A stretch of DNA of 64,000 bases, from positions 186,001 through 250,000 of the forward strand of contig NIVC01001216.1 of assembly GCA_002269645.1 (NCBI GenBank). The letters run 5' to 3'. This document shows, piece after piece, positions 1 to 59,469 of this stretch. The number at the start of each line of letters is the position of its first letter. Position 1 is the stretch's first letter. The translations under genes were made by a program, and so were the position numbers. This DNA is from Macrostomum lignano. Taxonomy: Eukaryota. Under the pieces are notes generated by a model. It was not told where the DNA came from. It made no database searches and was given only the letters and a program-made list of their open reading frames with translations.

Positions 1-590
1 AATCGTTAGTCTTTTTTTGCACCTAAATCATCAGTCTTTGTAACTGAATCGTTAGTCTTTTTTTGCACCTAAATCATCAGTCTTTGTTTGCATCTAAATC
101 ATCAGTCTTTGTTTGCACCTAAATCATCAGTCTTTGTTTGCACCTGAATCGTCAGTCTTTGTTTGCATCTAAATCATCAGTCTTTGTTTGCACCTGAATC
201 ATCAGTCTTTGTTTGCATCTAAATCATCAGTCTTTGTTTGCACCTAAATCATCAGTCTTTGTTTGCACCTGAATCGTCAGTCTTTGTTTGCATCTAAATC
301 ATCAGTCTTTGTTTGCACCTGAATCATCAGTCTTTGTTTGCATCTAAATCATCAGTCTTTGTTTGCACCTAAATCATCAGTCTTTGTTTGCATCTAAATC
401 ATCAGTCTTTGTTTGCACCTAAATCATCAGTCTTTGTTTGCACCTGAATCGTCAGTCTTTGTTTGCATCTAAATCATCAGTCTTAGTTTGCACCCGAATC
501 ATCAATTTTTGTTTGCACCTCAACAGTCTTTGGTTGCACCTAAACCATAGTCTTCGTTTGTACCTGAACCGCCAGTCTTTGTTTTCACCA
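1..590 (+). repeat. 25-bp tandem array (AAATCATCAGTCTTTGTTTGCACCT)n in the intron upstream of the first MON2 exon in the window
   Basis: Unit read directly with 25-nt period; it degenerates about 70 nt before the acceptor at 662. Confidence 0.9.
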
Positions 591-662
591 CACCGGATCA
601 TCCCAGCAAGCCTCGAAGAGCTTATACACAGCACGAATCCCTCCCCGTAACCTCGTCAACAG

Positions 663-1142
663 GCCCTCCAGCGTCTTCTAGGCGCTCGACTAATCAGCGA
701 AGAATCCGGCGCCATGGTAGTCCAGAGCATGTGGACCCTGATGGAGGAATCAGTTGAAGAGGTTCGCCTACTCCAAACCGCCATGCTGCTAGTTAGCAAT
801 TGTCCCGGTCTAACTGGCCGACCCCTGTCCAAAGCGCTGGCTCTGGTGCTCAGACTGCATTTTAGTCGTAGCTCCATGGTGACTCAAACAGCCGCTGCCA
901 CTATTCGACAGTGCCTTACGGCCGTGATGGACCGCGTGATGGTTGAAGACGCGGCCGCTCCGCCGCCAACTGGAAGCTCCTCGGAGGAGATTCAACCGGC
1001 CGCGGAGGACGCCAAGAATCTGCTGACAGACCTGTGCCTGCTGGTTAACGGAGAGCAGCCGCACTGGTTGCACGGCCTCACTACGATGACTCGGTCGCTG
1101 GGCTTGGAGCTGCTGCACGCTGCTTTGGCCGACTTTCCTAAG
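663..1142 (+). CDS. MON2: MON2 coding exon 1 of 12 in window (internal exon; N-terminus upstream of window)
   Basis: Acceptor caacag|GCC, donor AAG|gtcagt, 480 nt, phase 0. Encodes ALQRLLG...LWTLMEESVEEVRLLQT...LRLHF...TAAATIRQ...DLCLLVNGEQPHWL...MTRSLGLELL, recognisable as the MON2 N-terminal DCB/HUS region. The 12 exons join in frame to 4842 nt. Confidence 0.93.
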
Positions 1143-1174
1143 GTCAGTGAACTCGGGAGCGGCTTTCTCAGAAA

Positions 1175-2050
1175 CACTTTGGCATATCTGGATTTTGGCG
1201 CCACCGTTTTAGCATCCGAGCGTATCCGGGTTTTTGCGCCCACCTCTGGCTTATTCGAGTTTTCTGGCTTATCGAGTTTTCTGGCTTATTCGAGCTTTCG
1301 CGCCGTCCTTTTAGCATATTCGGGTTTTGGCGCCGCCCTTTGAGCATATTCGGGTTTTGGCGCCAACCTCTGGCTTTTACGAGTTTGGCGCCAACCTCTG
1401 GCTTTTACGAGTTTTGGCGCCAACCTCTGACTTTTACGAGTTTTGGCGCCAACCTCTGGCTTTTACGAGTTTTGGCGCCAACCTCTGGCTTTTACGAGTT
1501 TTGGCGCCAACCTCTGGCTTTTACGAGTTTTGGCGCCACCCTCTTATAATATTCGGGTTTAGGCGCCGCCCTTTGAGCATATTCGGGTTTAGGCGCCGCC
1601 CTTTGAGCATATTCGGGTTTTGGCGCCAACCTCTGGATTTTACGAGTTTTGGCACCAACCTCTGGCTTTTACAAGTTTTGGAGCCACCCTCTTATAATAT
1701 TCGGGTTTAGGCGCCGCCCTTTGAGCATATTCGGGTTTTGGCGCCAACCTCTGGCTTTTACGAGTTTTGGCGCCAACCTCTGGCTTTTACGAGTTTTGGA
1801 GCCACCCTCTTATAATATTCGGGTTTGGGCGCCGCCCTTTGAGCATATTCGGGTTTTGGCGCCGCCCTTTGAGCATATTCGGGTTTTGGCGCCGCCCTTT
1901 GAGCATATTCGGGTTTAGGCGTCGCCCTTTGAGCATATTCGGGTTTTGGCGCCAACCTCTGGCTTATTCGGGTTTTGGCGCCAACCTCTGGCTTATTCGG
2001 GTTTTGGCGCCGCCCTTTTAGCATACATGGATCTGGGTTTTGGCGCCGGT
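1175..2050 (+). repeat. About 29-bp tandem array with two unit types sharing TTTTGGCGCC (MON2 intron 1)
   Basis: Units TTTGGCGCCAACCTCTGGCTTTTACGAGT and TTCGGGTTT(T/A)GGCGCCGCCCTTTGAGCATA read directly. Confidence 0.9.
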
Positions 2051-2237
2051 TACCTGGCATGGCCGAGGTTTGTTTTCCATTGCAACCAAGTTGTAGATTC
2101 CTAATGGAATGCAATTTAATACACTTCTGGCGCCCAGTATTGGCAGCGCCGCATGTGACTCAATTTTAGCGCCTCTGTTTCAGCACTTCTGATTACGCAA
2201 TTCAACTCCCACCGCACCCCAACCCTACCTGCCGCAG

Positions 2238-2820
2238 GTGTTCTCCGGCAATCCGCACTTTACTCGCCTACTAAAAGAGCAAGTCTGCCCGTTAATTATT
2301 CGCCTGTTTGGGCCAACACACAAGCACTCGCAGGCTGCTAATAGTGCTTTGTCATCGACCGGAATCTCGTCTGGCGGCGGCGCCTCGTCCTACCCGGCGC
2401 CGCCGGCGGCTCCTCTCGGCGATTTGCCGCCAACTGCTGCATCGATGGCTTCGTCAGTGTCGACGCAAGCGTCGGCTAATTTTGCTATTCACGTCCGACT
2501 GCACAGGCTGGTGGGAGTGCTGCTGCATTCTTACTTTGGTCTGGTCAGCACAGAGTGCGAGATTTTCCTCACGCTACTGATTCGTTTAGTAGACTCGGAT
2601 AAATGGCCCTGGCAACGAATGCTAGCCTTGGAAGTGCTGCACAAGCTGGTGCAACGGCCTGGCTTGGTGGCCGCAATCTGTTGCGCCTACGATATGAAAC
2701 GGCACGCGTCGAAAATCTTTGCCGTCCTAGTCGGCGCTCTGGCTGGCTACGTTCAGGGCGTGTTCACCGCGCCCAGGGAGGTTGGCGTGGGCGCTGCGGG
2801 CTCGTCTGGTTCTGCCGCTA
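2238..2820 (+). CDS. MON2: MON2 exon 2
   Basis: Acceptor ccgcag|GTG, donor CTA|gtgagt (phase 1). Encodes LLKEQVCPLIIRLF, STECEIFLTLL and YDMKRHASKIF motifs. Confidence 0.9.
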
Positions 2821-2846
2821 GTGAGTGCTTAGCGGCTGTCGGTTGA

Positions 2847-3565
2847 GCTCTTCTGGCTACCCTCCTGGCTACCCTCCTGGCTACCCTCCTTGCTGCCCGA
2901 TCTTTGCTACCCTCCTGGCTACCCTCCTGCCTACCCTCCAGGCTACCTTCCTGGCTACCTTCCTGCCTACCCTCTAGGCTACCTTCCTGCCTACCCTCTA
3001 GGCTACCTTCCTGGCTACCTTCCTGGCTCCCCTCCTGGCTACCCTCCTGGCTACCTTTTAGCTACCCTCTTGGCTACGCTTCTGGCTACCCTCCTACCTA
3101 CCCTCCAGGCTACCTTCCTGGCTACCCTCCAGGCTACCTTCCTGGCTACCCTCCTGGCTACCCTCCTGGCTACCCTCCAGGCTACCCTCCTGGCTACCCT
3201 CCTGGCTACCCTCCTGGCTACCCTCCTGGCTACCCTCCTGGCTACCCTCCTGGCTACCCTCCTGGCTACCCTCCTGGCTACCCTCCTGGCTACCCCCCTG
3301 GCTACCCTCCTCGCTACCCTCCCGGCTACCCTCCTGGCTACCCTCCTGGCTACCCTCCTGGCTACCCCCCTGGCTACCCTCCTCGCTACCCTCCCGGCTA
3401 CCCTCCTGGCTACCCTCCTGGCTACCCTCCTGGCTACCCTCCTCGCTACCCTCCCGGCTACCCTCCTGGCTACCCTCCTGGCTACCCTCCTGGCTACCCT
3501 CCTGGCTACCCTCCTGGCTACCCTCCTCGCTACCCTCCCGGCTACCCTCCTGGCTACCTCCTTGC
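2847..3565 (+). repeat. 12-bp tandem array (GGCTACCCTCCT)n (MON2 intron 2)
   Basis: Read directly; source of the spurious PPGY and LATL ORFs. Confidence 0.95.
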
Positions 3566-3736
3566 TGCTCTCCTTGCTACCCGACCTCTTCTACCTTCAG
3601 ACTCTTACTTTTAACCTTTAAGAATGGTTGTCTTTCTTTTTGAAACTTACGCAATTAATCAGTATTTACTCGTAAAAAACAAAATGCTTACTTTGCTACT
3701 GACATAGTCTAAGTATATTTTTTTATCAATTTTCAG

Positions 3737-3857
3737 TGAAAGAGACGCCGCCTGCTATGCTAGGCGGCATGCAAGTCGGTCCGGGCAGCAGTCCAAGCCC
3801 TTGCTTTGTGTACAAAGGCTTGATTGTGCCGCTGCACACCAGTCCCAAGGCTGTGTA
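3737..3857 (+). CDS. MON2: MON2 exon 3
   Basis: Acceptor tttcag|TG, donor TA|gtaagt, 121 nt. Encodes KETPPAMLGGMQVGPGSSPSPCFVYKGLIVPLHTSPKAV; the phase joins TA|C (Tyr) into LDMLDK of exon 4. Not in the ORF track frame list. Confidence 0.85.
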
Positions 3858-4027
3858 GTAAGTGTCTGTTCATTCTTAGTATTGGTACTATACAAATCTT
3901 TACATTTGCTAGGATTCCTGGAAGGTATTTTTTGCTACGATCTCGCTAGGGAAAGAAATCGGATTTCAACACAATCCCCGAAAAAAAAGATTTTCCTGCC
4001 GCAGGGGATTTTTTTAAAAATCTCATA

Positions 4028-4165
4028 CAGTGCTTTAGAGCATACTAAATGCGCTGGCGGAATTTGTCTATGGCGAAACCTCATTCACTGCTTAGAGCAT
4101 ACTAAATGCGCTGGCGGAATTTGGCTATGGCCTCATTCAGTGCTTAGAGCATACTAAATGCGCCA
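4028..4165 (+). repeat. Short 52-57-bp tandem duplication (about 2.5 copies, AGAGCATACTAAATGCGC core)
   Basis: Core seen at 4037, 4094 and 4146. Confidence 0.7.
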
Positions 4166-4299
4166 GCAATACGTAAAACATGCGCTCCTTACTTCAGTGG
4201 TCATGGTAATCGTTTCATGAAATGCTACGAGCGTACTAGAGACCGGGGCAAGAAGTCAAAGTTCAGGCAAAATTCCAATTATTCATATCTTCGTAACTT

Positions 4300-4849
4300 G
4301 AAAACGTTGCCGTCACAAGAATCGCTAAAGTCACTAGAGTTAACCACTCACTAGTGACTCTAGCGACTCAGGGACGACACTTTTTGACTTTTTACCGACT
4401 GAAACGACTGAGAGGCGACTGTTGATTCACGTCACGCATCAAGTGAGTTGTACGCAGAGTTGCAAAAAGTAGTTTAAGAGTCGTTGTCTTAGCGCTCAAT
4501 TTTCCACTAACTCAAGTGGACTGAATAGAGTTTTTTAAATGCAAAATTCGATTAAAATTCATAAATTGACGATTTAGACGCAATTCTACAGCGACTAGAG
4601 CACGCCTCTCAAATACGACTCTACGACGCCAGAGTCACTTCAGAGTCTCAGACAATAAAACGCCTCAAGGTGACTCTTCGGCGACTCTTTGACGACTTGT
4701 TTGCAACTTGTACCGTGACATCTTATCGTTTTAGAGTCGTCTAGAGTCAGCTTCTATTCTATTTTAGCCGTGTTACCTGAAACAAATTTGAAACGATACT
4801 GAAGCGCTTCTAGGCCTGGGTAACTGTTTTCATCGGGCGGCTTTTTCTA
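4300..4849 (+). mobile_element. Diverged copy of the GACTC/GAGTC-rich element also present at 6251-6931; its 3' part is interrupted by a SINE
   Basis: Colinear shared blocks such as AATTCATAAA, TACGACTCTACG, ACAATAAAACG, TTTGACGACTTGTTTG and TCGTTTTAGAGTCGTCTAGAGTCA. Confidence 0.7.
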
Positions 4850-4860
4850 CGGCAAAAACC

Positions 4861-5217
4861 TTTTTTTTTAGAGGCAGGGGGGTTGTGTGCACCCTGGCGC
4901 AATTTAAGCGTCATTGGCACACAACCGGCGAGAGGCATTGCTGCCCATTCCGCCGACTCCCCTGAGCAGGCATACAAGCGCGCAGATACGTACGCAGGCA
5001 CACACTCACACAGGAGTGTACAGCGGCCCTAACTTTATCAATTGTTAGGCATGTACACTTCACTGCGCCTTGGGGGGTTGGCTCTCAAGGCCGTTAATTG
5101 CACAAGCGAGCCAAGCCAAGATTCCAATCCAGCCCCAAATTAATGTGGCTGCACTTGGAATCGAGCCTGGGTCGCGGCACACCAGAGCAGCTGCGCTACC
5201 GCTGGGCTACGGCCCCC
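4861..5217 (-). mobile_element. tRNA-derived SINE, near full length, with A-tail and 11-bp TSD
   Basis: Minus-strand head GGGGGCCGTAGCCCAGCGGTAG (A-box) and GGCTCGATTCC (B-box-like); poly(T) at 4861-4869 on +; direct repeat CGGCAAAAACC at 4850-4860 and 5221-5231; second copy at 29930-30243. Confidence 0.8.
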
Positions 5218-5456
5218 TTTCGGCAAAAACCATAAATCTTCAAAAAATCGTTTTAGACGAAAAAAACGTATTTTTAAAGTGAAGTGAATGGAAACAACAG
5301 TAATGAGTATCACGAAATATTGTTTTTATAATAATTTTGATATCTTCCATTTATTTATATAGCTGTTACTCTGTATGTCTTCTAGTGCGTATCTGTACAG
5401 AGAAACCAAAACAATAACTATGAGGAGTTTATTAAATTATAAATAAAAACCTCATA

Positions 5457-6097
5457 CTACAGCTCGTCCATCTGTCTGTAGATCTGTTTTAACTGTTGGA
5501 CATTGTCTCTCAGCAATTCGGCATTCACTTTCCAATTGGCTGTCTTGTGTGGCATGGCGTGCATTGAGGCCATCCTGCCAGATGCGGTAGCCGTTACTAG
5601 CATGTCTCTTAGTTGTGTCAGCGCTTTATGCGCCCCGGATAATTGCTTGTTGAAGCCCGCCATTATTGGTATCGATCGGTGTCGATTATTTGTTCGCTCG
5701 TCCTCTTCAGCATCCTCATTGGCGTCTAAGTGCTCTTGATCCAGATAGGTTGCCAGATCCTTTAGCATGGCGTCTAAGCGTTCGAGGCTGGCTTCGGCTT
5801 CCCTCTCCCGGCCCAAGTGTCATCGTCTTCGTCGGGCTCTTTGCCAATGTCGGCATCGTTCAAGTAGCTTCTTTTACTTCTTCGGTTGATTTTTTCTTCC
5901 ATGAATCGTAGATTAATTCCCGCTTGAATGATATCACCCTGCGGACCGTCGTTCAGGTGATCCAGTAGTTCTGTCAGGCTTTCAAAGTTGGGTAAATCTT
6001 CTTCTATGGTGAAGAAATCTATTGTTGAGGAATCCTTTTTGGTATTGTCCGTGGATCGACGCTGCCGATTGTGATGCTCTTTGGCGCGCGACTGGTA
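5457..6097 (-). CDS. Exon 2 of nested antisense secreted preproprotein (contains an apparent 1-nt frameshift near 5816)
   Basis: Acceptor ctctttaactgtacag|TAC in phase 0 with the exon 1 donor. YQSRAKEHHNRQRR...NRRSKR...EDDDT shifts into LGREREAEASLERL...IYRQMDEL-stop. AATAAA on the - strand at 5433-5428. Confidence 0.7.
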
Positions 6098-6250
6098 CTG
6101 TACAGTTAAAGAGATAATGCGGAATTGTCTGATAAACGCATATTGAATATTGTTATTCTCAGATGTATGCGACTTTTCCAAGGGAATATGCAAATACAAT
6201 AACACTTTAATCGAATGACTTAAAGGCAAGGTGGCCGGAGTGACGGCTAA

Positions 6251-6931
6251 GGCCGGTTCACATTACATTCAGTAACTCCGCGGGTCAAACCCGTTAATAA
6301 CGTTACCATTACATTACGTTACATTTTAACGACTCAACGACTGTAATGCGACGAAGAGGAGACGACTTTTGAGTCACTAACACATCACGTGAGCTGCAGA
6401 ATCGTAAGAGTCGCGAAAAAGTCGCTCAGGAATCGTTGTGCTAGCGGTTAACTTTATACTAACCTTAAGTATACTAAATAGAGTCGTTATAAATGCGAAA
6501 TGCGATTATAATTCATAAAGTGACACAGATGTACTTTAAACGCAACTCAGTGATTCTACAGTGACTCCGGCACGCCTCAGCTACGACTCTACGGTCCCAT
6601 AGTCACTATAGAAGCGTCACTTGCGTCGTTTCAGAGTCGCAAACAATAAAACGATTCAAATTGACTTTTAGGCGACTGTTTGACGACTTGTTTGGCGAAT
6701 TGTACCAGGACATCTCGTCGTTTTAGAGTCGTCTAGAGTCAACTTCTTTCCTATCTTACTTGTGTTACCAGCAAAAACTTTGAAACAAATCTGGGACGCT
6801 TCTTAGCCTAAATACCGTTTTCAGTGGGAAAGAAGATTGCTCAAATCAATGTTAAAATAGGTCTAAAGAACTTTACATACCTTTAAGCAATGTTTGACCT
6901 GTAAAGCTATTATCGGTAATGTGAACCAGAC
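6251..6931. mobile_element. MITE / non-autonomous DNA transposon with 16-17-bp TIRs (PIF/Harbinger-like termini), in the intron of the nested gene
   Basis: Left GGCCGGTTCACATTAC; right GTAATGTGAACCAGAC (14/16 complementary); flanked by TAA and TTA. Confidence 0.65.
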
Positions 6932-7188
6932 TTAACAACATAGCAAGGGTAATTTAGCTGCAAATCCGAGGTCTGTTTACTGCAGTGGTGGCATGTACTG
7001 GTCAGGGTTGAACTGCATAGCTCAGCTTATGTCTTTTGTTCAATGTGGCTGCCTTGAAGAGTAAAAGTAGCCTATCAGCTGTGTACTAACCACGACCAAC
7101 TCTGCTGAACTTGCTCTTAGCATGTTAAGGACATATTAAGAGATACACAATTCAAATAAAAATACTAAATGGTGAAATAGTACATCAC

Positions 7189-7695
7189 CTGTCTCAGCTC
7201 CTCCATGTGATCCAGCAAATAGCCAGAACCGTCAAACAGATCTGCGTATCGTCTCGATCGTTTGATTCGCTCGCCGTGTTGACTGGCGAATTCGCGCATT
7301 AGGTCAGACTTTATTCCGGCTATATGCTTGTCTTGCTTGGCTTTGTCATGGTTGGCCTTGTTTTTTTGATGCCTACTTTTTAATGCTCTCCGATTTGTCT
7401 GCCTTTTGCTGGTAAATCCGCCGATTTTCTCGTTCGACTTGATACTTTCGGTAAAATTGTCTGCACTTTTCCGTAGCTGCAATAAATCGCTGTTTGGTAC
7501 AGCTGAAGCTGGTGTAGTCCAAAACCAAGTGATATTGTATACCTGTCGGCTATAGCGGCTTTGTTTACCAACGGAGGCTTCAAATGTTTTAGACTGGTCG
7601 TCATGGTGTTGACATCTTGCTGATTGTACTAGCACCAGCAATATTAACAGCAGTGGCGGCAGCAAAAGCGATCGCGTCAACTTTTTTGTCAGCAT
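7189..7695 (-). CDS. Exon 1 of nested antisense secreted preproprotein (signal peptide plus basic cleavage sites)
   Basis: ATG start; hydrophobic LLLPPLLLILLVLVQSARC signal; RK, KR, RR and KRSRR sites; donor CAG|gtgatg at 7189/7188; 169 codons. Confidence 0.78.
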
Positions 7696-9342
7696 TCCGT
7701 GTAGAATGATTCGTTTAGTTTTGTTTCTCTGCTTAAAAAAGCAATTTTGTCAACGCAGTAAGGTCTTATAATTCTGGTGTGTTGATGCGTTTTGCGGCTC
7801 GACTTCAACTGAATTTGTAAGGTCTCTTTAACAGACAGGCTTTGCAAGATAAATTGCTTTAGCCTGCGCGTGTTTTAACCTCAGTTGAATTGCACTTTAG
7901 TCCAACCACTGTCGATATCTCTATGGTCAAAAGATCGACAAATGATTTAGTGTCAAGCGTGGAAATCGTGTTAGTAAAATTTATATAATTCTAGATCTAG
8001 TCTCAGAATGAAATACGCATTAATAAAAGCTAGAAGATGGAACACCAGATCACCTGTTTTTGTTGTCTTTATTGTTGCTTTATTGAAAAATGAGCAGATA
8101 TAATGCGACACTATATGTCGTAAATCAGGTCATAAGCGAAGTCCCATTATGCTCGTAGTTTGTGAATGAAAAACAGATGTGTTACTCTTCTCAAACAAGA
8201 AAGCTTCACAAATAAAGATCTAAGATCTTGTTTCTTTGACGCCTGACCCTCGTAATGATTTAGTGCTGCGTAAAATAAACCTAAATTCCTTACGAGTGTA
8301 CAACGCTCTATTTAAAAACTACAAACACCTGTAAGTCGAAACATTCAAAAGTGTACTTTCATCACCAAAATAGTTATACTAAATAGCTTGCGGATTCGAG
8401 AACGTCAAGAAAATTTCAAATGAAAAGTCACTGTCTAATAGTATAACCTCAGACAGTAGCTAGTCCAAAATGACTGTCTGTAGCATGAAACGCCAATCTA
8501 AATAATTCAGTTACAAATGTCCAAATTTAGGGTCTGCTAGTTGTCAAAGCTGTGCAATAAGCGCCAGATTTTACATGTAGCAAATTGCATTTCCAATCGT
8601 ACTGTCATTCCGTTGCTGCTCAAACAGATGGTGTGGAAACGAATTGCATCAGTCAACGTCTGTCAAGCACTTTTTATTCTCAAAGTCAATTCAGAATGGA
8701 ATAAACATATTGGAAAATAATGCTAGAACACTTTTGTAAACAGCATTTACAAGCCAGACCTTTTCAATTGGTCATTTTCAATAAAACAGCTATTTTTATC
8801 CGAGAGTGAACTCAAGTTCAGAATCTTCGCATCACTGATGTAACTATCAAAGCATCGGAATAGCAAGGTCTTTGAAACAATCCAATACTTCCTTTCGTTT
8901 CTAAGACTGTCTCATTAATTTTGAAAAAAATCATCTAGTTGCTAGGTATTAAAATATTTCAATATTTCCTTTCATTGTATTCATTTTGACTTTGTTTACG
9001 AGTTATTTTCTTCATTGACCATTGACGGCCTTCGCTTTAAGCTCTTATTGACTGACCATCTGCCGATATAATTAGAACTGATGGCGCATGACTTGGATTA
9101 AAAAAATAGGATTTCTAGTTAGCTGTACTTTACTTTTATTTTTCTTTTAGTCAAAATATTTCTAGCATAGCTCTATTGAATTCAGATAAAAAATTTATTT
9201 CTGAATTCAATTTTAGTCAGTTAAAATTGTCAGTTAAACAAATCTACTAGAGTGAGTTTGATCAACTGGGATCTAACATTCCAGCGAAGTAAAGCAGTTG
9301 CTAAGCAACTCTGTTTCCCACCCCATTTCGCCCTTCAAACAG

Positions 9343-9639
9343 CCTGGACATGCTGGACAAACAGGAGCCGCCGCCCCCGCCAGAAGGCCAGGCCCTGTCG
9401 CTGGCGTTCTACACCTTAGTGGAGGTGATTCGCTCCGTCCAAGCCATCCTTGAGGATCGCTGCCAGCCGCCCAGCATGTGCGAGAGTCTCCTGCCGCCTC
9501 CCGCGGGCTCAGCCAATTCCGACCAATCCACCACAGACAGCGGCGCAGGTGATGGGAAACGCGAGGAGCTGCACAATACTCTGGTGTCCTCTCTGTGGTG
9601 CGCCGCGCTTGCCGCCCTGTCTCTGCTGCTGGAGACCAG
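9343..9639 (+). CDS. MON2: MON2 exon 4
   Basis: Acceptor aaacag|C, donor AG|gttagg. Encodes [22 protein letters not shown]...[15 protein letters not shown]. Confidence 0.92.
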
Positions 9640-9659
9640 GTTAGGCTCTTGATGGTTGG

Positions 9660-10552
<893 letters not shown>

Positions 10553-11451
10553 TATATCGTAAGTCCCGTTTATTCTCTTTGCGTGTCTGTCTTTTTAGCC
10601 TCGCTTTCCTGTAGGTTGCATTTTGTCCAAAAATTCACCTGCCAGTGTTTGACCACCTCGGGTCATCATACAAAATTGTTTTGCTTCCTTCTGTTGGAAT
10701 TTTCACCCTCTTGCCACGACGCGATGAGGTCACACCTTGTTCTGATGGGGTACTTTTAGGATGAAGCCGTAACTTCAGCCTCTCGTTTGCACTGATTAGC
10801 ACGCTTAGCGAATTCACGCGTGCTACATGTAATCTTTTTCCTAGAAACTGTTTCCTAGCGCGTGCTGCACTTACTGCCTGGCGCGTGCGTTTTCCTCCTA
10901 TAAACAGGCCCGTTTCATCTTTGTTTTTTATTCTTAGTTTAACTTTTTTCGGCCTAGGCTTGTGATTTAGGGCTTCTGCTTTTATGCTTTAACATTTTAC
11001 TGTTTGTTACTTGCCGGGTGAAATCCATTTTAGCCTGGAGGTACTTTAAAGACAAGAATTTTTTTGACGAAAAGGTTGACCAGGTAAATACGTTTCCCGT
11101 CTATATCAATTGCTTAGAAGAATATCAGTCTTATTTTCCGTCTGAGTCCATATTTTGCGTCCCTGCCCGGCTGAAGTGCTCCGTTGTTTGTCCTTTAATC
11201 AATGGCCCCGTCGTTGTTACACCTGCATCTTGTGCCAGGTGATGAGTTGAGCACTATAGTTTTGCGACAGGAATGTTTTGTTGCTTCGATTGGATCTGTG
11301 CTACTTATTTCTTAACCTTTACTTTCTGGATTCCCGTGCCATAACTTCCTGCGTCGGGATTTGTACAGTATGGATTGCAGTGCGGACACACTTTGATCGA
11401 TAGGTGCAACTTTTTTAATCAATACCCATGTGTTTGCCTGAGTTCTGGCTT

Positions 11452-12165
<714 letters not shown>

Positions 12166-13334
12166 GTCAGACTAAAAGAAACAAAATCAGATGCAGGAAA
12201 AAGGCAATTTAAGACTTCATTTCGCCGGAGACAGGCAGACACTCGATCGTTTTGCCCATGGCTGTCCTCATTCGGAATTTCTATCCTCTCTCAAATAGTG
12301 GAAGATGATGACCGCTTGGTTGGGAAGTGAAATCCGACCTACCTTCCCCCCGACTGTCGAGGCCCCTCCGCTGTCGAAGTCTATCTCCGCAGGCCCATTG
12401 CTCTCGCACGCTGATGCTAGTTTTGTTATCGCTTCCGCTGTTGCACTGGGCTAGGGTTACCGCTTGATTAGTGATGGCGTGCTCCGCTACCGTAACTGTA
12501 ATATTACTAACATTATAGCCTTACTATAGATTATTTATTGTACTTCTAAACTGTACTTGCCACTGCCGGTCTCGGTTTTATTTGTGAGAATGAGGCGGCC
12601 CTCTCAATCTGCAGACTCTTACTATCCGTATAGCTATAGTTATTCGTGCGCGTGTCTCTCCTCCCCTCTTTGGGAGTTTCTGCTATCGATCTACAGGGCT
12701 GCCTGTTTTTCGCCCACTCTCTCTCTCTCTCTCATTCTTCCACCGTCCTGCTTCTCCCCGCAGGCAAAAGTTGTTTTCGATTCTGTGTGCTTCTTTATTT
12801 TCCGCGGCGCCATTGGAATCTATAATTAAAATATTGTGACGATCATGTAGCTGTGGCTGGAAGGCGCAAGTTTTGAGGGAAATGAGGGTGGGCGGGGGTG
12901 AAGATGTTCAGTTCTGGCCTCTGTCCGGCTCAGTAGCTTGCGTACTTTTTTAATGTTTAATCGATTCTGTTTTAGCATATTTAATTATTTTGACCCAATG
13001 ACCCAGTGGGAGCGCTGAAATTGTGCTTTCCATGTTAGCCATCCAGACTTTGTCATTTTTAATTAGACATGAAAGTTGTAACCTTTGAATATGTCATTTT
13101 TATCATGAAACATAGAAGATGATGTGACATTTGATATTTCATGTTCGACATTTGATGGATATAAGATAAGGCATGACAATTTACGTGTCATTTTTAACAA
13201 AAGAAATTTAGGGAGTGATATTGGAAATGTCACACCATCTACTTCCAATTTCAGACATTCCATTTCTAAAGTCACTTTTTATTTCTAATTTATTTCTCGT
13301 AATATCACACCCTCAGTTTCTAATTTCATGAATT

Positions 13335-13815
13335 CCATTTCTAATGTCACACATTCCATTTCTAATGCCACACATTCCATTTTCAATGTCACACATTCCA
13401 TTTTCAATGTCACACATTCCATTTTCAATGTCACACATTCCATTTTCAATGTCACACATTCCATTTTCAATGTCACACATACCATTTTCAATGTCACACA
13501 TTCCATTTTCAATGGCACACATTCCATTTTCAATGTCACACATTCCATTTTCAATGTCACACATTCCATTTTCAATGTCACACATTCCATTTTTAATGTC
13601 ACACATTCCATTTTCAATGTCACACATTCCATTTTCAATGTCACACATTCCATTTTCAATGTCACACATTCCATTTTCAATGCCACATTCCATTTTCAAT
13701 GTCACACATTCCATTTTCAATGCCACATTCCATTTTCAATGTCACACATTCCATTTTCAATGCCACACATTCCATTTTCAATGCCACATTCCATTTTCAA
13801 TGTCACACATTCCAT
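13335..13815 (+). repeat. 21-bp tandem array (AATGTCACACATTCCATTTTC)n
   Basis: Read directly; NVTHSIF periodicity in the ORF track. Confidence 0.95.
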
Positions 13816-14544
13816 TAGAAACAAAGAACGTGACATTTTGAATGTACTGTTGGACATTTGAAGCGGTAAGTTATCTAATAAATAAAACAATTACAATTAG
13901 TAATGACAATAAATTATGATTATAATACGCGTGTGTATTAACAAATGTATACATGCCTAGCTTTGTACCTTGAGTCGTCTGCAGCAATGCTTTTCGTTGA
14001 ACTTTGCCAAAAAGCCCTCGGGAGATTTTAGCTAACAATATCGAGGCGAATTGGCTATAGGCTAGTTAATAAGAGTCGTACACGCTATCGGCTAGTTTTT
14101 TTAAAGGCCTCTTGCCTCTTAACTAGATTGTTCCTGATAATCTGGCCATGGTTGCTAGCACAAATTTAATATGATTTATGGCTTCCTTGAGTGCAGTAGT
14201 GCCGGTCACTAAGCGACTGAGATCTTATTAATTAACCTTTGCCTTGTCCCTATCTTATTTGAGGTGGTTTTTCTTGTGTTAAAGTCGAACATCCGAGAAC
14301 CACTATTCTGTAGTGTAAACCTCGGATTCTAGCGCTTATACTTACTGTTTTAACCTGTTCGTGCGATCAAAGACTGCGTTAATTATAATTATTAGGTTTC
14401 ATTGTGTCTGTGTAGCAATAAATATATATGCGTTATTCATAAGCAACTGGTGGGCTATTTACCATATTCATGTGGCCTCCAGAAATGTATTTCCCTAATT
14501 AGTATTAGAACTAGCTAATTCCCTTAACAACAGAGATAATTCCC

Positions 14545-15040
14545 TTAGCAACCGAACTAGCTACCCTAGCAACCGTACAATTAGCTTTAGCAACCGAACT
14601 AGCTACCCTAGCAACCGTACAATTAGCTTTAGCAACCGAACTAGCTACCCTAGCAACCGTACAATTAGCTTTAGCAACCGAACTAGCTACCCTAGCAACC
14701 GTACAATTAGTATTAGCAACCGAACTAGCTACCCTAGCAACCGTACAATTAGCTAGCTACCCTAGCAACCGTACAATTAGCTTTAGCAACCGAACTAGCT
14801 ACCCTAGCAACCGTACAATTAGCTTTAGCAACCGAACTAGCTACCCTAGCAACCGTACAATTAGCTTTAGCAAGCGAACTAGCTACCCTAGCAACCGTAC
14901 AATTAGTATTAGCAACCGAACTAGCTACCCTAGCAACCGTACAATTAGTATTAGCAACCGAACTAGCTACCCTAGCAACCGTACAATTAGTATTAGCAAC
15001 CGAACTAGCTACCCTAGCAACCCACAATTAGTATTAGCAA
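14545..15040 (+). repeat. 42-bp tandem array (TAGCAACCGAACTAGCTACCCTAGCAACCGTACAATTAGCTT)n
   Basis: Read directly; 14-aa periodicity. Confidence 0.93.
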
Positions 15041-15464
15041 TCGATTATCAAACTAGATTTAATAGTTCAGCCCTCTACGAGTATATGTAATGGAAATCGA
15101 ACAATCCATTGAAATCGGCTTATAAATGAAACTTGATCTTTCTGTTGAATTTTATTCAAGCCAGTTTCTCGCTATTCTCTCCAGCTATTCACTGCACTTA
15201 AAATATTCCGTTCCTTTAATATTTCCCAGCGAATATATTTATCCCTAAGAGGAGTTGCATTTCGCTTTCTAGATCTGTCGATCTGAGAATTCAACTGGAA
15301 TTGTAAACAGATCCCGATGGAAATATTTTCACTGCTAAGTCGTTGGGGTTGTTCTGGTATTGGCTTTTTATATGATCCTTGTGTGGATGTGGCTCTTAAT
15401 TCTAAGCTAAATTTTATATTGTATATCCGCATTTTCTACTTGCTAACTTGTTTGTCTGACTCAT

Positions 15465-16830
15465 TTTCTCTGAAACTGTCTTTGTCTGACTCATTTTATT
15501 TGAAACTGTCTGACTCATTTTCTTGGAAACTAACTGTCTTTGTCTAACTCATTTTCTTGGAAACCGGCTTTGTCTGACTCATTTTATCTGAAACTGATTT
15601 CGTCTGACTCATTTTCTTTGAAACTTTTTTGTCTGACTCATTTTTTCTAAAACTGTCTTTGACTCATTTTCTCTGAAACTGTCTTTGACTCATTTTCTCT
15701 GAAACTGTGTCTTTGTCTGTCTCATTTTCTCTAAAACTGGCTTTGTCTGACTCATTTTTTGAAACTTTTTTTTCTGTCTTATTTTCTCTAAAACTGTCTT
15801 TGTCTGACTCATTTTCTCTGAAACTGTGTTTCTCTGACTCATTTTCTCTAAAACTGTCTTTGTCTGACTCATTTTCTTGGAAACTGGCTTTGTCTGACTC
15901 ATTTTCTTGGAAACTGGGTTTGTCTGACTCATTTTCTCTGAAACTGATTTTGTCTGACTTGTTTTCTTCTAAACTGTCTTTGTCTGACTCATTTTCTTCG
16001 AAACTGTCTGACTCATTTTATTTGAAACTGTCTGACTCATTTTCTTGGAAACTAACTGTCTTTGTCTAACTCATTTTCTCTGAAACTGTCTTTGTCTGAC
16101 TCATTTTCTTGGAAACTGGGTTTGTCTGACTCATTTTCTCTGAAACTGATTTTGTCTGACTTGTTTTCTTCTAAACTGTCTTTGTCTGACTCATTTTCTT
16201 CGAAACTGTCTGACTCATTTTCTTCTAAACTGACTTTGTCTGACTCATTTTCTTCGAAACTGTCTGACTCATTTTCTTCTAAACTGACTTTGTCTGACTC
16301 ATTTTATTTGAAACTGTCTGACTCATTTTATTTGAAACTGTCTGACTCATTTTCTTGGAAACTAACTGTCTTTGTCTAACTCATTTTCTCTGAAACTGTC
16401 TTTGTCTGACTCATTTTCTTGGAAACTGGCTTTGTCTGACTCATTTTCTTGGAAACTGGGTTTGTCTGACTCATTTTCTCTGAAACTGATTTTGTCTGAC
16501 TCATTTTATCTGAATCTGTCTTTGACTCATTTTATCTGAAACTGTTTTGACTCATTTTCTCTGAAACTGATTTTGTCTGACTCATTTTCTTCTAAACTGT
16601 CTTTGTCTGACTCATTTTCTTCGAAACTGTCTGACTCATTTTCTTCGAAACTGTCTGACTCATTTTCTTCGAAACTGTCTGACTCATTTTCTTCTAAACT
16701 GTCTTTGTCTGACTCATTTTCTTTGAAACTGTGTGTGTCTGACTCATTTTCTTGGAAACTGTGTGTGTCTGACTCATTTTCTTGGAAACTGTGTGTGTCT
16801 GACTCATTTTCTCTAAAATGGTGTGTGTCT
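15465..16830 (+). repeat. 24/30-bp tandem array GTCTGACTCATTTTCTCTGAAACT(GTCTTT), containing TGACTCA
   Basis: Read directly; ends about 45 nt before the exon 5 acceptor. Confidence 0.93.
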
Positions 16831-16874
16831 GTCTGTCGCCCTTCAATCACCCCCTTCCCTGCTATTCAATTCAG

Positions 16875-17056
16875 CACCGACGAGTCAGCCACAGAATCAA
16901 TTCTAAAGAGTCTGGAGACGATGGTGTCTCTATGCGGCCGCTTGGGCCTGACAACGCCTCGGGACGCTTTCATCACCGCCATGTGCAAAGCTTCTTTGCC
17001 TGCGGCCTACGCCCTGGCCGTGCTGAGCAGCGCCTCCGTTAGTCAGCATCATAAAG
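16875..17056 (+). CDS. MON2: MON2 exon 5
   Basis: Acceptor ttcag|C, donor AAG|gtgaga. Encodes (S)[11 protein letters not shown]...[24 protein letters not shown]. Confidence 0.94.
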
Positions 17057-17219
17057 GTGAGAGTATATCTTCATCATTATTGTGGTGTACTTGTTGAGCT
17101 CATGTAGAATTTGTTGATTCCGGGCCGCTTTACATCCTGCCTGCGTGAGTGCGTGCTCAGGGATCAGCGGAATGGGCTTAACTGCTCGGCTCCCATTTGG
17201 CTGCCTAACTCTCTAGCTA

Positions 17220-17330
17220 AGGGGTTTTAGCCTAGTGCTAGAGCGTCAGATTCACGACTTGAAGGTCAGGGGTTCGATTCCCGATCCTACTGGAACAATA
17301 TTTGTCCTTGATCAAGGATAGCTTACCTAC
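17220..17330 (+). mobile_element. tRNA-derived SINE head / pseudo-tRNA
   Basis: A-box TAGCCTAGTGCTAG, B-box GGTTCGATTCCC, followed by TGTCCTTGATCAAG; acceptor stem does not close. Confidence 0.6.
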
Positions 17331-17430
17331 TAGGTAGAGATTAGGTAGAGAGGTTGACTCAACTGACTAACTGAATAACTAACCGCCGGCATTGCTAATC
17401 TACTCTCTGCCTTGTCCAACTCCACATCAG

Positions 17431-17993
17431 GCTCTTCAGCCGGCCAGTCGTCGTCTTCCACGTTTGCTGCGGCAAATATTCAAGCAGCCACGGCGGGAGC
17501 CGCAGCCACAGCTTCGTCTGCGGCATTGGCTGCGGCTGATTTAACGCCGTCTCGCGAGTTCAACCAGGTTGTGGTGGTCGGCCCGGCCCTGCCCACGCCC
17601 GGCCTGAGCTCCGGTTCGGCCGCGGTCGAGCTCGGCAAAGTGCACCTGACTGCTAAGAATATGCAGTGCATGAGGGCCATATTGAGCGTGGCGCATTGTC
17701 ATGGCGCTATACTGGGCACAGCTTGGCACCTGTTGCTGACCACACTGCAGCACCTGACCTGGGTTCTGGGCTTGAAACCGGTCTCTGGTGGCAGCCTGGT
17801 GCACGCTAAAGGTTCAGGCGAGAGCGGCACGGTGGTCACTACCGCTGTGGTAGCTGATCTCGCAGTGCTTTCTAGCATGCTGAGCAGGCTGTTTGAGAGC
17901 TCACAATTCCTGGACGATGTGGCTCTGCATCACCTGATATCGGCTCTGTGCAAGCTGTCTATGGAGGCTATGCAATTGGCCTCTGCTAATAAG
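17431..17993 (+). CDS. MON2: MON2 exon 6
   Basis: Acceptor catcag|GC, donor AAG|gtattt. Encodes [27 protein letters not shown]...[31 protein letters not shown]. Confidence 0.94.
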
Positions 17994-18134
17994 GTATTTC
18001 AAGCTTTGTAATGTCTTGTTAAAAAAGTCGCATTTGTTGTGTATGTTGCGTCTGGCATATTTATCGCCTGTAGTGTTTGTTTGTTCTGAAAGCTCTTTTG
18101 CTGACTTATTTTCTCTGTAAGACTCTGGTGATAT

Positions 18135-20695
18135 TATCTAGAATAGTCTATGGACTGGCTCAGGCCTCAAATTGTCCAGAATAGTCTATGGACTGACTCA
18201 AGCCTCAAATTGTCCAGAATACTCTATGGACTGACTCAAGCCTCAAATTGTCCAGAATGCTCTATGGACTGACTCAAGCCTCAAATTGTCCAGAATAGTC
18301 TATGGACTGACTCAAGCCTCAAATTGTCCAGAATAGTCCATGGACTGGCTCAAGCCTCAAATTGTCCAGAATGCTCTATGGACTGACTCAAGCCTCAAAT
18401 TGTCCAGAATAGTCTATGGACTGACTCAAGCCTCAAATTGTCCAGAATAGTCCATGGACTGGCTCAAGCCTCAAATTGTCCAGAATGCTCTATGGACTGA
18501 CTCAAGCCTCAAATTGTCCAGAATAGTCTATGGACTGACTCAAGCCTCAAATTGTCCAGAATAGTCCATGGACTGACTAAAGCCTCAAATTGTCCAGAAT
18601 AGTCTATGGACTGACTCAAGCCTCAAATTGTCCAGAATAGTCTATGGACTGACTCAAGCCTCAAATTGTCCAGAATGCTCTATGGACTGGCTCAAGCCTC
18701 AAATTGTCCAGAATGCTCTATGGACTGACTCAAGCCTCAAATTGTCCAGAATAGTCTATGGACTGACTCAAGCCTCAAATTGTCCAGAATAGTCTATGGA
18801 CTGACTCAAGCCTCAAATTGTCCAGAATGCTCTATGGACTGGCTCAAGCCTCAAATTGTCCAGAATAGTCCATGGACTGACTCAAGCCTCAAATTGTCCA
18901 GAATGCTCTATGGACTGACTCAAGCCTCATATTGTCCAGAATAGTCCATGGACTGGCCCAAGCCTCAAATTGTCCAGAATGCTCTATGGACTGGCCCAAG
19001 CCTCAAATTGTCCAGAATACTCTGGCTGACTCAAGCCTCAAATTGTCCAGAATAGTCTATGGACTGACTCAAGCCTCAAATTGTCCAGAATGCTCTATGG
19101 ACTGGCTCAAGCCTCAAATTGTCCAGAATAGTCCATGGACTGACTCAAGCCTCAAATTGTCCAGAATGCTCTATGGACTGACTCAAGCCTCATATTGTCC
19201 AGAATAGTCCATGGACTGGCCCAAGCCTCAAATTGTCCAGAATGCTCTATGGACTGGCCCAAGCCTCAAATTGTCCAGAATACTCTGGCTGACTCAAGCC
19301 TCAAATTGTCTAGAATGCTCTATGGTTGACTCAAGCCTCAAATTGTCCAGAATAGTCTATGGACTGACTCAAGCCTCAAATTGTCCAGAATGCTCTATGG
19401 ACTGGCTCAAGCCTCAAATTGTCCAGAATAGTCCATGGACTGACTCAAGCCTCAAATTGTCCAGAATGCTCTATGGACTGACTCAAGCCTCATATTGTCC
19501 AGAATACTCTATGGCTGACTCAAGCCTCAAATTGTCCAGAATGCTCTATGGTTGACTCAAGCCTCAAATTGTCCAGAATAGTCCATGGACTGACTCAAGC
19601 CTCAAATTGTCCAGAATGCTCTATGGTTGACTCAAGCCTCAAATTGTCCAGAATAGTCCATGGACTGACTCAAGCCCCAAATTGTCCAGAATGCTCTATG
19701 GACTGACTCAAGCCTCATATTGTCCAGAATACTCTATGGACTGGCCCAAGCCTCAAATTGTCCAGAATAGTCTATGGACTGACTCAAGCCTCAAATTGTC
19801 CAGAATACTCTGGCTGACTCAAGCCTCAAATTGTCTAGAATGCTCTATGGTTGACTCAAGCCTCAAATTGTCCAGAATAGTCTATGGACTGACTCAAGCC
19901 TCAAATTGTCCAGAATGCTCTATGGCTGACTCAAGCTTCAAATAGTCTAGAATGTTCTATGGTTGACTCAAGCCTCATATTGTCCAGAATACTCTATGGA
20001 CTGGCCCAAGCCTCAAATTGTCCAGAATACTCTATGGCTGACTCAAGCCTCAAATTGTCCAGAATAGTCCATGGACTGACTCAAGCCTCAAATTGTCCAG
20101 AATAGTCTATGGACTGACTCAAGCCTCATATTGTCCAGAATACTCTATGGCTGACTCAAGCCTCAAATTGTCCAGAATGCTCTATGGTTGACTCAAGCCT
20201 CAAATTGTCCAGAATAGTCCATGGACTGACTCAAGCCTCAAATTGTCCAGAATGCTCTATGGTTGACTCAAGCCTCAAATTGTCCAGAATAGTCCATGGA
20301 CTGACTCAAGCCCCAAATTGTCCAGAATGCTCTATGGACTGACTCAAGCCTCATATTGTCCAGAATACTCTATGGACTGGCCCAAGCCTCAAATTGTCCA
20401 GAATACTCTGGCTGACTCAAGCCTCAAATTGTCTAGAATGCTCTATGGTTGACTCAAGCCTCAAATTGTCCAGAATACTCTATGGACTGGCCCAAGCCTC
20501 AAATTGTCCAGAATACTCTATGGCTGACTCAAGCTTCAAATAGTCTAGAATGCTCTATGGTTGACTCAAGCCTCATATTGTCCAGAATACTCTATGGACT
20601 GGCCCAAGCCTCAAATTGTCCAGAATACTCTATGGCTGACTCAAGCCTCAAATTGTCTAGAATGCTCTATGGTTGACTCAAGCCTCATACTGCCT
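18135..20695 (+). repeat. 38-bp tandem array (CTATGGACTGACTCAAGCCTCAAATTGTCCAGAATAGT)n, about 2.5 kb
   Basis: Read directly; 38-nt period. Confidence 0.97.
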
Positions 20696-48110: not shown

Positions 48111-48202
48111 CTAATGCATATTCTAGTCCGTACTTGCCCCGGAGCTGAGCATGCATAATCTGACCGCACTAATCCCAGCCTTTCTGTCCCCATCCCATTC
48201 AG

Positions 48203-58891: not shown

Positions 58892-59469
58892 GATTTGACT
58901 AAATTTATATGACAGCTCGTTGCAGAGTGCATGTAAGCCTTGCTTTAGCTCTGATTTGGTTCTTAAGACTGTCGTCTCAAGTTTAGTTTGATTCGATTGT
59001 TTTCATAGTCTATGGCTTTGACTACTGATTTCTTTGTTTGATAGACACCGTCTGAATTCGGTAGCTCGGTCACTAACTCACTCACTCACTCATGCAGACG
59101 CACACGCATACACACAACAACAACAACAGCAAAGCTGCTGCCGCGGTGGCGATCTCCCGTTTCTTTTGGTCAGGGAACATCGGGAAGACGGGAAGAACGG
59201 CGTTCGGGTACAGACGTCTAGTGACGATAGGCAGAAAGCCAGCGGACTGCTCCTTTGAAGCAATATCCCTCAAAGTTAATCGAGCAGATTTGTGTGGATG
59301 GCGATGGATCTTTTCATCTCAACGCTCTCAGCCACTTGTTCCTCATTTTCCTGTCCTTTGAAAAAGTATGGAAGGACAGTCTCCCCCAGAGACACCGCTG
59401 CGTTGTTTCAACGAGCCATACAGCAGCTCTTTTTCTTTCTCTCAGCAATTTGGAAGATTCCCCGGCTGC

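What the first reader, a model, noticed from the sequence alone, without database searches (positions are those of the whole stretch)
5457..7695. Unannotated secreted multi-peptide precursor nested antisense in MON2 intron 3
Seen: two separate ORF-track hits splice in phase (CAG|gt at 7189 to cag|TAC at 6097). The product has a signal peptide, no Cys after the signal, and repeated convertase-type sites (RYSR, RK, KR, RR, KRSRR, RQRR, RRSKR, RHR). Released pieces include YADLFDGSGYLLDHMEELRQ..., STDNTKK...LTELLDHLND... (LLDH motif repeated) and SIPIMAGFNKQLSGAHKALTQLRDMLVTATAS-GR (possible amidation). Inference: this is a neuropeptide/prohormone or seminal-fluid-type precursor. The helical L..L.DML and VNAELL segments faintly recall the CRF/DH44/egg-laying-hormone family and the YAD start recalls GHRH, but this resemblance is by eye only.
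Basis: partly seen in the sequence, partly recalled or inferred. Interest (0 to 1): 0.75.

Follow-up and report, generated by a model that had tools for sequence, protein, structure and literature searches.

The report
Annotated orphan secreted proprotein inside MON2 intron
This is a real two-exon gene of the flatworm Macrostomum lignano, already in GenBank as a hypothetical protein, that sits backwards inside an intron of MON2 and encodes a species-restricted secreted protein with three strong furin-type cutting sites; nothing ties it to any known hormone family.

Summary
The window is Macrostomum lignano contig NIVC01001216.1 (assembly Mlig_3_7). Its product equals GenBank PAA70651.1 (BOX15_Mlig017689g1, 276 aa), so the gene is not unannotated. 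It is nested antisense in MON2 intron 3, as are its two homeologous copies.

In the window the frame stops at 5774. The C-terminal pieces it listed (SIPIMAGF...) lie in another frame, because a G-run (5814-5812) is one base shorter than in the other two copies. Those copies, and a UniProt entry, give 382 aa.

The protein has a classical signal peptide and no Cys after it. It has no homologue among 1.84 billion representative proteins, no Pfam or PDB match and no confident fold. Plain dibasic sites occur at the chance rate and the LLDH repeat is chance. Furin-type R-x-[KR]-R motifs are enriched about tenfold (P about 6e-4) in three clusters.

Best reading: a lineage-restricted, convertase-processed secretory proprotein whose tissue and role are unknown. 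CRF, ELH and GHRH membership is not supported. A KDEL-like C-terminus (-MDEL) keeps an ER-resident rival alive.

The parts
7189..7695 (-). Exon 1 coding part (residues 1-169). It includes the signal peptide (7695-7612) and the basic N-terminal piece.
   Evidence: ORF and translation. Identical to the N-terminus of PAA70651.1.
7249..7269 (-). Multibasic cluster 1: R143-I-K-R-S-R-R149, two overlapping R-x-[KR]-R motifs.
   Evidence: enrichment test.
6098..7188 (-). Intron (GT...AG, 1091 nt). It holds a dispersed repeat at 6338-6823 that is 71% identical to 4396-4832.
   Evidence: It is 3.3% diverged from the homeologs, against 0.3-0.8% for the exons.
5774..6097 (-). Exon 2 as annotated in this copy (residues 170-276, stop TAG 5776-5774). 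It includes RQRR (6067-6056) and RRSKR (5884-5870).
5812..5814 (-). G-run that is one base shorter than in the two homeologous copies. It shifts the frame after Trp263.
   Evidence: Alignment of window, L002 and L003. Frame A read to DDDTW plus frame B read from GRERE equals UniProt A0A1I8JEZ8 exactly.
5457..5816 (-). Out-of-frame continuation ORF. In intact copies it encodes residues 264-382: an acidic spacer, then helix-prone C-terminal segments (single-sequence AlphaFold2 model, low confidence) ending in -QMDEL. Stop is TAG 5459-5457.
   Evidence: It stays open and is identical at protein level to P0003 over this stretch.
5428..5433 (-). AATAAA polyadenylation signal, 24 nt after the full-length stop codon.
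7766..7770 (-). TATAA motif 75 nt upstream of the ATG. Candidate core promoter by inference only.
2193..2843 (+). Open frame containing MON2 exon 3 (end of the Sec7-like HUS domain). This is the host-gene exon upstream of the nested gene.
   Evidence: Pfam HUS 77-161/161, E = 2.6e-20.
9305..9649 (+). Open frame containing the next MON2 exon (exon 4), downstream of the nested gene. Assigned by inference: this translation had no Pfam hit.
   Evidence: no Pfam family for this piece (protein 9). The host gene is called as a 1697-aa MON2 spanning the locus.

Best explanation
This is a bona fide, RNA-seq-annotated, two-exon gene of Macrostomum lignano (BOX15_Mlig017689g1). It is nested antisense in intron 3 of MON2 and is present at the same place in all three assembled homeologous loci.

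The intact product is 382 aa. It enters the secretory pathway through a cleavable signal peptide (inferred). The mature chain is Cys-free, highly charged, helix-prone and without a confident fold. It carries three clusters of furin-type sites: RIKRSRR 143-149, RQRR 180-183 and RRSKR 241-245.

Most likely mechanism (inferred): a furin/PC-type convertase in the trans-Golgi or in secretory granules cuts it into four pieces:
- a basic N-terminal piece (29-142, pI about 10.5);
- a 30-aa acidic peptide (YADLF...EHHN);
- a 57-aa acidic peptide (STDNT...EEKIN);
- a 137-aa C-terminal piece (acidic spacer plus a basic helical end).

So it works like a prohormone or granin-type proprotein. Its tissue and target are unknown.

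The window copy reads only 276 aa because of a G-run that is 1 nt shorter. This is most likely an assembly error or a very recent polymorphism, because the downstream frame is otherwise intact.
For: - Identity and annotation.
- Nested in MON2 at all three loci. Intron 3.
- The Mlig_3_7 annotation was built from RNA-seq (StringTie/TACO/TBONE) according to PMC5730564, so the junction has transcript support.
- Exons are 4-10 times less diverged than the intron between homeologs: 6/1148 against 36/1087 substitutions, Fisher p about 1e-6.
- Signal-peptide architecture and the UniProt name.
- R-x-[KR]-R motifs: 4 against 0.4 expected, P about 6e-4, robust to local shuffles.
- AATAAA lies 24 nt after the full-length stop.
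- The window's two frames joined equal UniProt A0A1I8JEZ8 exactly.
- Amphipathic-helix signal is slightly above shuffles, P = 0.024.
Against: - No cleavage has been observed.
- No homologues exist to test whether the sites are conserved.
- The three copies are 98-99% identical and so are uninformative.
- No Gly-basic amidation sites and no repeated peptides.
- The predicted products (30-137 aa) are long for neuropeptides.
- The C-terminus -MDEL resembles an ER-retrieval signal, which would keep the protein away from furin.
- The basic clusters could instead be binding motifs in a charged helical protein.
- Six of the nine coding differences between copies change the amino acid, so constraint on the protein is not demonstrated by dN/dS.
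Confidence: 0.5

Rival explanations
1. It is a gland or seminal-fluid type secretory protein (prostate, cement, pharyngeal or epidermal glands). It is released essentially intact, and the basic clusters act as binding or charge motifs rather than cleavage sites.
For: - Signal peptide, orphan status and rapid-evolution profile are typical of M. lignano reproductive secretory genes. In PMC5977470, 31 of 76 prostate-limited transcripts had no BLAST hit and 38 of 65 had signal peptides.
- Six of nine coding differences between homeologs are non-synonymous.
Against: - The gene is not among the 192 M. lignano genes with transferred ISH annotation (prostate, antrum and so on) in the uncut Table S11 of PMC7336406.
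- The furin-motif enrichment (P about 6e-4) is left unexplained.
Confidence: 0.2
2. It is a resident protein of the ER or early secretory pathway, retrieved through its KDEL-like C-terminus (-QMDEL). It would be an acidic, helical luminal protein, perhaps an escort or chaperone-like factor, and is never exposed to furin.
For: - The C-terminal D-E-L has a composition-based chance of about 6e-4.
- It has a signal peptide, acidic stretches, no Cys and helical propensity.
- Many non-PROSITE residues at position -4 work in human cells (PMC2140024).
Against: - Met at -4 is outside PROSITE [KRHQSA]-[DENQ]-E-L and is not among the residues reported as efficient (K, R, H, N, F, W, Y).
- ER residents are usually conserved, whereas this protein is an orphan.
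- No Pfam hit, including the RAP domains.
- The furin-motif enrichment is left unexplained.
Confidence: 0.12
3. It is a precursor of a CRF/DH44/egg-laying-hormone-type or GHRH/secretin-type peptide hormone.
For: By-eye only: a YAD start after a multibasic site, and the KALTQLRDML and VNAELL helical segments.
Against: - No Pfam-A family matched the whole protein or any of the five fragments at E <= 10.
- No phmmer hit in 1.84 billion representative proteins or in the PDB.
- The putative C-terminal peptide is bounded by weak sites: RHR, and a monobasic GR with no upstream basic residue.
- In the window copy this region is out of frame.
Confidence: 0.03
4. It is a young lineage-specific transcribed ORF with little or no function. 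In this particular copy it is a pseudogene truncated by the frameshift.
For: - No homologue anywhere.
- Frame break in the window copy.
- The non-synonymous to synonymous count of 6:3 is compatible with relaxed constraint.
- No confident fold.
Against: - Exons are much more conserved than the intron between homeologs (p about 1e-6).
- The post-frameshift ORF is still open over 119 codons and identical in protein to an intact copy.
- An intact version of exactly this allele exists in UniProt.
- It has a well-formed signal peptide, splice sites and a poly(A) signal.
Confidence: 0.1

Closest known systems
Furin/PC-processed prohormones and granin-like proproteins (for example the Aplysia ELH prohormone, whose first cut is at a tetrabasic site; proSAAS; VGF; secretogranins). 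This comparison rests on general knowledge.
   Same: Signal peptide; Cys-free, charged, largely unstructured or helical chain; acidic spacers; several multibasic R-x-K/R-R sites that would release peptides of 30-60 aa.
   Different: No sequence or profile similarity to any of them. No Gly-dibasic amidation sites, no repeated peptide units, no evidence of neuroendocrine expression, and a KDEL-like C-terminus.
Macrostomum lignano prostate-limited seminal-fluid candidates (Mlig-pro1-76; PMC5977470)
   Same: Same species; secreted; many are orphans without BLAST hits.
   Different: Not among the ISH-annotated genes transferred to the Mlig_37v3 transcriptome (PMC7336406 Table S11). Its tail or prostate expression is untested.
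KDEL/HDEL-tailed soluble ER proteins
   Same: Signal peptide plus C-terminal x-D-E-L; acidic regions.
   Different: Position -4 is Met, which is outside the PROSITE motif and is not reported as efficient. The protein has no conserved domain and is an orphan.
Nested intronic genes (host-nested gene pairs on opposite strands)
   Same: A small two-exon gene lies entirely within a large host intron on the opposite strand. The arrangement is kept in all three homeologous loci.
   Different: Nothing unusual. The same host gene carries a second antisense nested gene, an Srw-like GPCR.

Membership tests
Neuropeptide/prohormone precursor (generic) | N-terminal cleavable signal peptide | tested here: met
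   The n-region is KK..R, followed by a 15-residue Leu-rich core (mean Kyte-Doolittle 2.9), then A-R-C or V-Q-S at positions -3 to -1. UniProt names the 382-aa copies 'Signal peptide-containing protein'. SignalP itself was not available.
Neuropeptide/prohormone precursor (generic) | Convertase sites in excess of chance flanking the peptides | tested here: inconclusive
   Plain dibasic sites: 9 against 9.08 expected. Furin-type R-x-[KR]-R: 4 against 0.4 expected, P about 6e-4, in three clusters. Actual cleavage is untested.
Neuropeptide/prohormone precursor (generic) | Amidation signals (Gly before basic site) and/or repeated related peptides | tested here: not met
   G[KR][KR] occurs 0 times. 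The only repeated 4-mer, LLDH, is expected by chance (P = 0.58).
Neuropeptide/prohormone precursor (generic) | Peptide segments conserved in orthologues; neuronal or endocrine expression | not testable with these tools
   No homologues outside M. lignano. The expression tables in paper supplements were truncated in the held copies.
CRF / DH44 / ELH hormones | Match to the family profile; amidated peptide of about 36-44 aa bounded by dibasic sites | tested here: not met
   No Pfam-A model matched the whole protein or the C-terminal fragment at E <= 10. The boundaries are RHR and a monobasic GR.
Secretin/GHRH/glucagon superfamily | Match to the Hormone_2-type profile at the peptide N-terminus | tested here: not met
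   The fragment YADLF...EHHN gave no Pfam family at E <= 10.
KDEL-type ER-resident proteins | C-terminal [KRHQSA]-[DENQ]-E-L or an experimentally efficient variant | tested here: inconclusive
   The C-terminus is M-D-E-L. Positions -3 to -1 fit. Position -4 Met is outside PROSITE and is not listed among the efficient residues in PMC2140024. Flatworm receptor specificity is unknown.
M. lignano seminal-fluid (Mlig-pro) candidates | Prostate-limited ISH signal | tested here: inconclusive
   Mlig017689 is absent from the uncut list of ISH-annotated genes. That list covers only screened candidates.
MON2 (host gene) | DCB, Sec7-like HUS and Mon2_C domains in order on the plus strand | tested here: met
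   Pfam hits: DCB 4-80 and 80-177; HUS 2-49 and 77-161; Mon2_C 356-574 and 571-819. The gene is called as a 1697-aa MON2.

The most novel reading that the evidence does not exclude
The gene encodes a Macrostomum-specific peptide hormone precursor. Its long acidic helical peptides, or its basic helical C-terminal domain, would signal through an orphan receptor. One conceivable receptor is the Srw/FMRFamide-receptor-like GPCR nested on the same strand in the same host gene about 21.5 kb away, which would make a co-located ligand-receptor pair inside MON2.
Probability: 0.04. Interest if true: 0.7.

Novelty: new member of a known kind. Interest (0 to 1): 0.3.

Why it matters
If cleavage and a signalling role were shown, this would add a lineage-specific peptide precursor to a transgenic flatworm model whose peptide-hormone repertoire is poorly charted.

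As it stands it is an already annotated orphan secretory gene with a suggestive but untested processing pattern. It is a useful candidate for ISH, RNAi and peptidomics, but not a discovery in itself.

It also illustrates a practical point. One homeolog in the Mlig_3_7 assembly carries a homopolymer-length frame break that truncates the annotated protein.

Tried and rejected
- Homology: a word-indexed search of 5.8 billion proteins found only the M. lignano cluster. Exhaustive phmmer against 1.84 billion representatives found only the protein itself. Pfam on the whole protein and on five predicted fragments gave nothing, apart from a sub-threshold RRN3 hit on the acidic spacer. The PDB sequence search gave nothing at E <= 10.
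- Structure: single-sequence AlphaFold2 of the full protein gave pLDDT 48. The C-terminal 118 aa gave pLDDT 58 and pTM 0.41, as three helices. Both are too poor, so no fold search was run.
- Literature: 'Mlig017689' occurs in no searchable full text. It occurs in none of the held supplements of the eight papers with held files (PMC7336406, PMC5816591, PMC5730564, PMC8662610, PMC10092323, PMC12732829); PMC10786194 had no held files. The genome-wide expression tables were cut when stored, so absence from them is uninformative.
- The LLDH 'repeat' is chance.
- Cryptic intron: I considered a 103-nt intron (donor AGAA|GTAAAA near 5877, acceptor TTAG| at 5774) that would restore the frame in the window copy. 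I rejected it because it has no pyrimidine tract, it is not used in any annotated model, and the intact copies read straight through.
- Transposon origin: the exons are unique in the window, and there are only three genomic loci, all in MON2.

Full report
**Source and identity.** The reverse complement of window bases 1-17,695 is 100% identical, without gaps, to locus L001. L001 is GenBank contig NIVC01001216.1 of the Macrostomum lignano assembly GCA_002269645.1 (Mlig_3_7). A protein search with the conceptual product found a single cluster of four M. lignano entries:
- PAA70651.1, BOX15_Mlig017689g1, 276 aa.
- PAA54206.1, g2, 382 aa.
- PAA83450.1, g3, 382 aa.
- UniProt A0A1I8JEZ8, 382 aa.

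UniProt calls the g2 entry (A0A1I8GX33) and A0A1I8JEZ8 'Signal peptide-containing protein'; the g1 and g3 entries are only 'Uncharacterized protein'.

**Checking the observation.**
- On the minus strand an ORF starts at ATG 7695 and runs to ...GAG CTG AGA CAG, ending at 7189, followed by gtgatg.
- The acceptor ...tctctttaactgtacag precedes TAC at 6097.
- Exon 1 is 507 nt, so the junction is in phase 0.
- Exon 1 joined to 6097..5774 translates to exactly PAA70651.1.
- The Mlig_3_7 annotation was derived from RNA-seq (STAR mapping, StringTie/TACO, TBONE boundaries from trans-splice and poly(A) reads) according to PMC5730564. The model therefore implies transcript support, although I could not inspect reads.
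- 'Unannotated' is wrong.

- In the window, exon 2's frame ends at TAG 5776-5774 (…DDDTWAGRGKPKPASNA*).
- The segment holding SIPIMAGFNK…QMDEL is the separate ORF 5816..5457, in another frame.
- Aligning the window with the two other loci (L002, L003) shows one difference responsible. The window has GGG at 5814-5812 where both others have GGGG.
- Frame A read to DDDTW and then frame B read from GRERE reproduces UniProt A0A1I8JEZ8 residue for residue, including the four residues that distinguish the window allele from g2 and g3.
- The downstream frame is still open for 119 codons and is identical in protein to g2.
- AATAAA (5433-5428) lies 24 nt after the full-length stop.
- I therefore read the break as an assembly homopolymer error or a very recent polymorphism. 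The biological product is 382 aa.

**Context.**
- All three loci lie inside, and antisense to, a gene called as a 1697-aa protein with DCB, Sec7-like HUS and Mon2_C domains.
- On the window's plus strand the first MON2 exon lies just upstream of base 1 (DCB profile 4-80).
- The second exon is within 651-1340 (DCB 80-177, HUS 2-49).
- The third is within 2193-2843 (HUS to 161/161).
- The next is within 9305-9649; that assignment is by inference, since the piece had no Pfam hit.
- MON2 continues to about 55.8 kb.

**Is it a constrained gene?**
- Between the window and L002 the coding parts differ at 6 of 1148 sites. The gene's own intron differs at 36 of 1087 sites, plus 52 gap columns (Fisher p about 1e-6).
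- The exons are unique within the window.
- Among the copies there are six non-synonymous and three synonymous differences.
- The non-synonymous changes fall in the signal peptide, the basic N-terminal region and the acidic spacer. The three synonymous changes fall at residues 341, 342 and 375.
- The counts are too small for a dN/dS statement.

**The protein.**
- Residues 1-28 form a classical signal peptide: KK/R n-region, a 15-residue Leu-rich core, then small residues before Q29.
- The mature chain has no Cys and is 16% K+R and 17% D+E.
- Charge is segregated. The N-terminal piece has pI about 10.5, the middle and the spacer have pI 3.7-5.2, and the last 73 residues have pI about 10.7.
- AlphaFold2 without an alignment gives only low-confidence helices (pLDDT 48 for the whole protein, 58 for the C-terminal 118 aa).
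- Mean helical hydrophobic moment is slightly above shuffles (P = 0.024).

**Are the 'convertase sites' more than chance?**
- Overlapping dibasic pairs: 9 observed against 9.08 expected from composition.
- KR or RR: 7 against 4.95 (P = 0.21).
- R-x-x-R: 5 against 2.6 (P = 0.10).
- G-basic-basic: 0.
- The furin-type motif R-x-[KR]-R occurs 4 times against 0.4 expected (P about 6e-4).
- Those motifs form three clusters: RIKRSRR 143-149, RQRR 180-183 and RRSKR 241-245.
- Three or more clusters has P about 4-6e-3, even when shuffling only within 40-120-residue blocks.
- This is the one feature that really argues for proteolytic processing.
- Cutting there would give pieces of 114, 30, 57 and 137 residues.
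- The LLDH repeat is expected by chance (P = 0.58).

**Relatives.**
- None were found. Exhaustive phmmer against 1.84 billion representative proteins returned only the query's own cluster.
- Pfam-A returned nothing for the whole protein or for the five predicted fragments at E <= 10. The one exception was a sub-threshold RRN3 hit on the acidic spacer.
- The PDB sequence search returned nothing.
- The putative C-terminal peptide is bounded by weak sites (RHR, and a monobasic GR without an upstream basic residue).

**A feature pointing the other way.**
- The full-length protein ends in -QMDEL.
- D-E-L at a C-terminus has a composition probability of about 6e-4, and on a signal-peptide protein it suggests KDEL-receptor retrieval.
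- Met at -4 is outside the PROSITE motif.
- In the human reporter screen the efficient -4 residues were K, R, H, N, F, W and Y, with a continuum of partial motifs (PMC2140024).
- The flatworm receptor's specificity is unknown, so an ER-resident reading remains a live rival.

**Expression.**
- I could not get tissue data.
- The identifier occurs in no searchable full text and in none of the held supplements; PMC10786194 had none held.
- The genome-wide tables of PMC7336406 and PMC10092323 were truncated in storage.
- The one complete relevant list is Table S11 of PMC7336406, which holds 192 M. lignano genes with transferred ISH annotation, including prostate and antrum genes. It lacks this gene. 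This weakly disfavours a known seminal-fluid candidate.

**Verdict.**
- The best-supported reading is a lineage-restricted secretory proprotein cut at three furin-type clusters. It works like a prohormone or granin-type protein, but it is not a demonstrable member of any hormone family.
- Rivals are an intact gland or seminal secretory protein, an ER resident retained through MDEL, and a weakly constrained young gene.
- Confidence by step:
  - real expressed gene, about 0.95;
  - entry into the secretory pathway, about 0.9;
  - convertase processing, about 0.5-0.6;
  - neuropeptide or hormone function, about 0.2.

Noticed in passing
window 32301-31285 and 29800-29195, minus strand: A second gene is nested antisense in MON2: a two-exon rhodopsin-type GPCR. 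Pfam 7TM_GPCR_Srw matches profile 3-223 (E = 3e-15) and 224-316 (E = 1e-10). It has weak PDB matches to CysLT1 and SSTR4 receptors. It lies on the same strand as the secreted-protein gene, about 21.5 kb away.
   Followed up: partly
window 1-589, 1218-2025, 2853-3582, 9668-10553, 11455-12159, 13317-13816, 14545-15044, 15451-16818, 18133-20000+: MON2 introns are packed with long mini- and microsatellite arrays, for example a 12-mer x61, TGTC x224, CTA x234 and a 38-mer x50. These create many long spurious ORFs.
   Followed up: partly
window 6338-6823 and 4396-4832: A dispersed repeat of about 490 nt (71% identity, same orientation). One copy lies inside the nested gene's own intron and the other lies elsewhere in MON2 intron 3. 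It is probably a non-autonomous mobile element.
   Followed up: no
L002 versus L003 (homeologous loci), gene region: The two other copies are identical through the 5' flank, exon 1 and the whole 1135-nt intron. They then differ at 5 sites in exon 2 and at about 7.6% of sites in the 3' flank. This mosaic suggests gene conversion, recombination or an assembly chimera between homeologs.
   Followed up: no
window 45882-48158, plus strand: A roughly 2.3-kb G-rich tandem array (GC skew +0.70) gives 650-760-codon Cys/Val-rich pseudo-ORFs in three frames within a MON2 intron. It is repeat-generated, not a gene.
   Followed up: no
window 59255-59986, plus strand: An ORF downstream of MON2 carries a reverse-transcriptase-like motif (LLYNAETWTL) but had no Pfam hit. 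It is probably a decayed retroelement fragment.
   Followed up: partly
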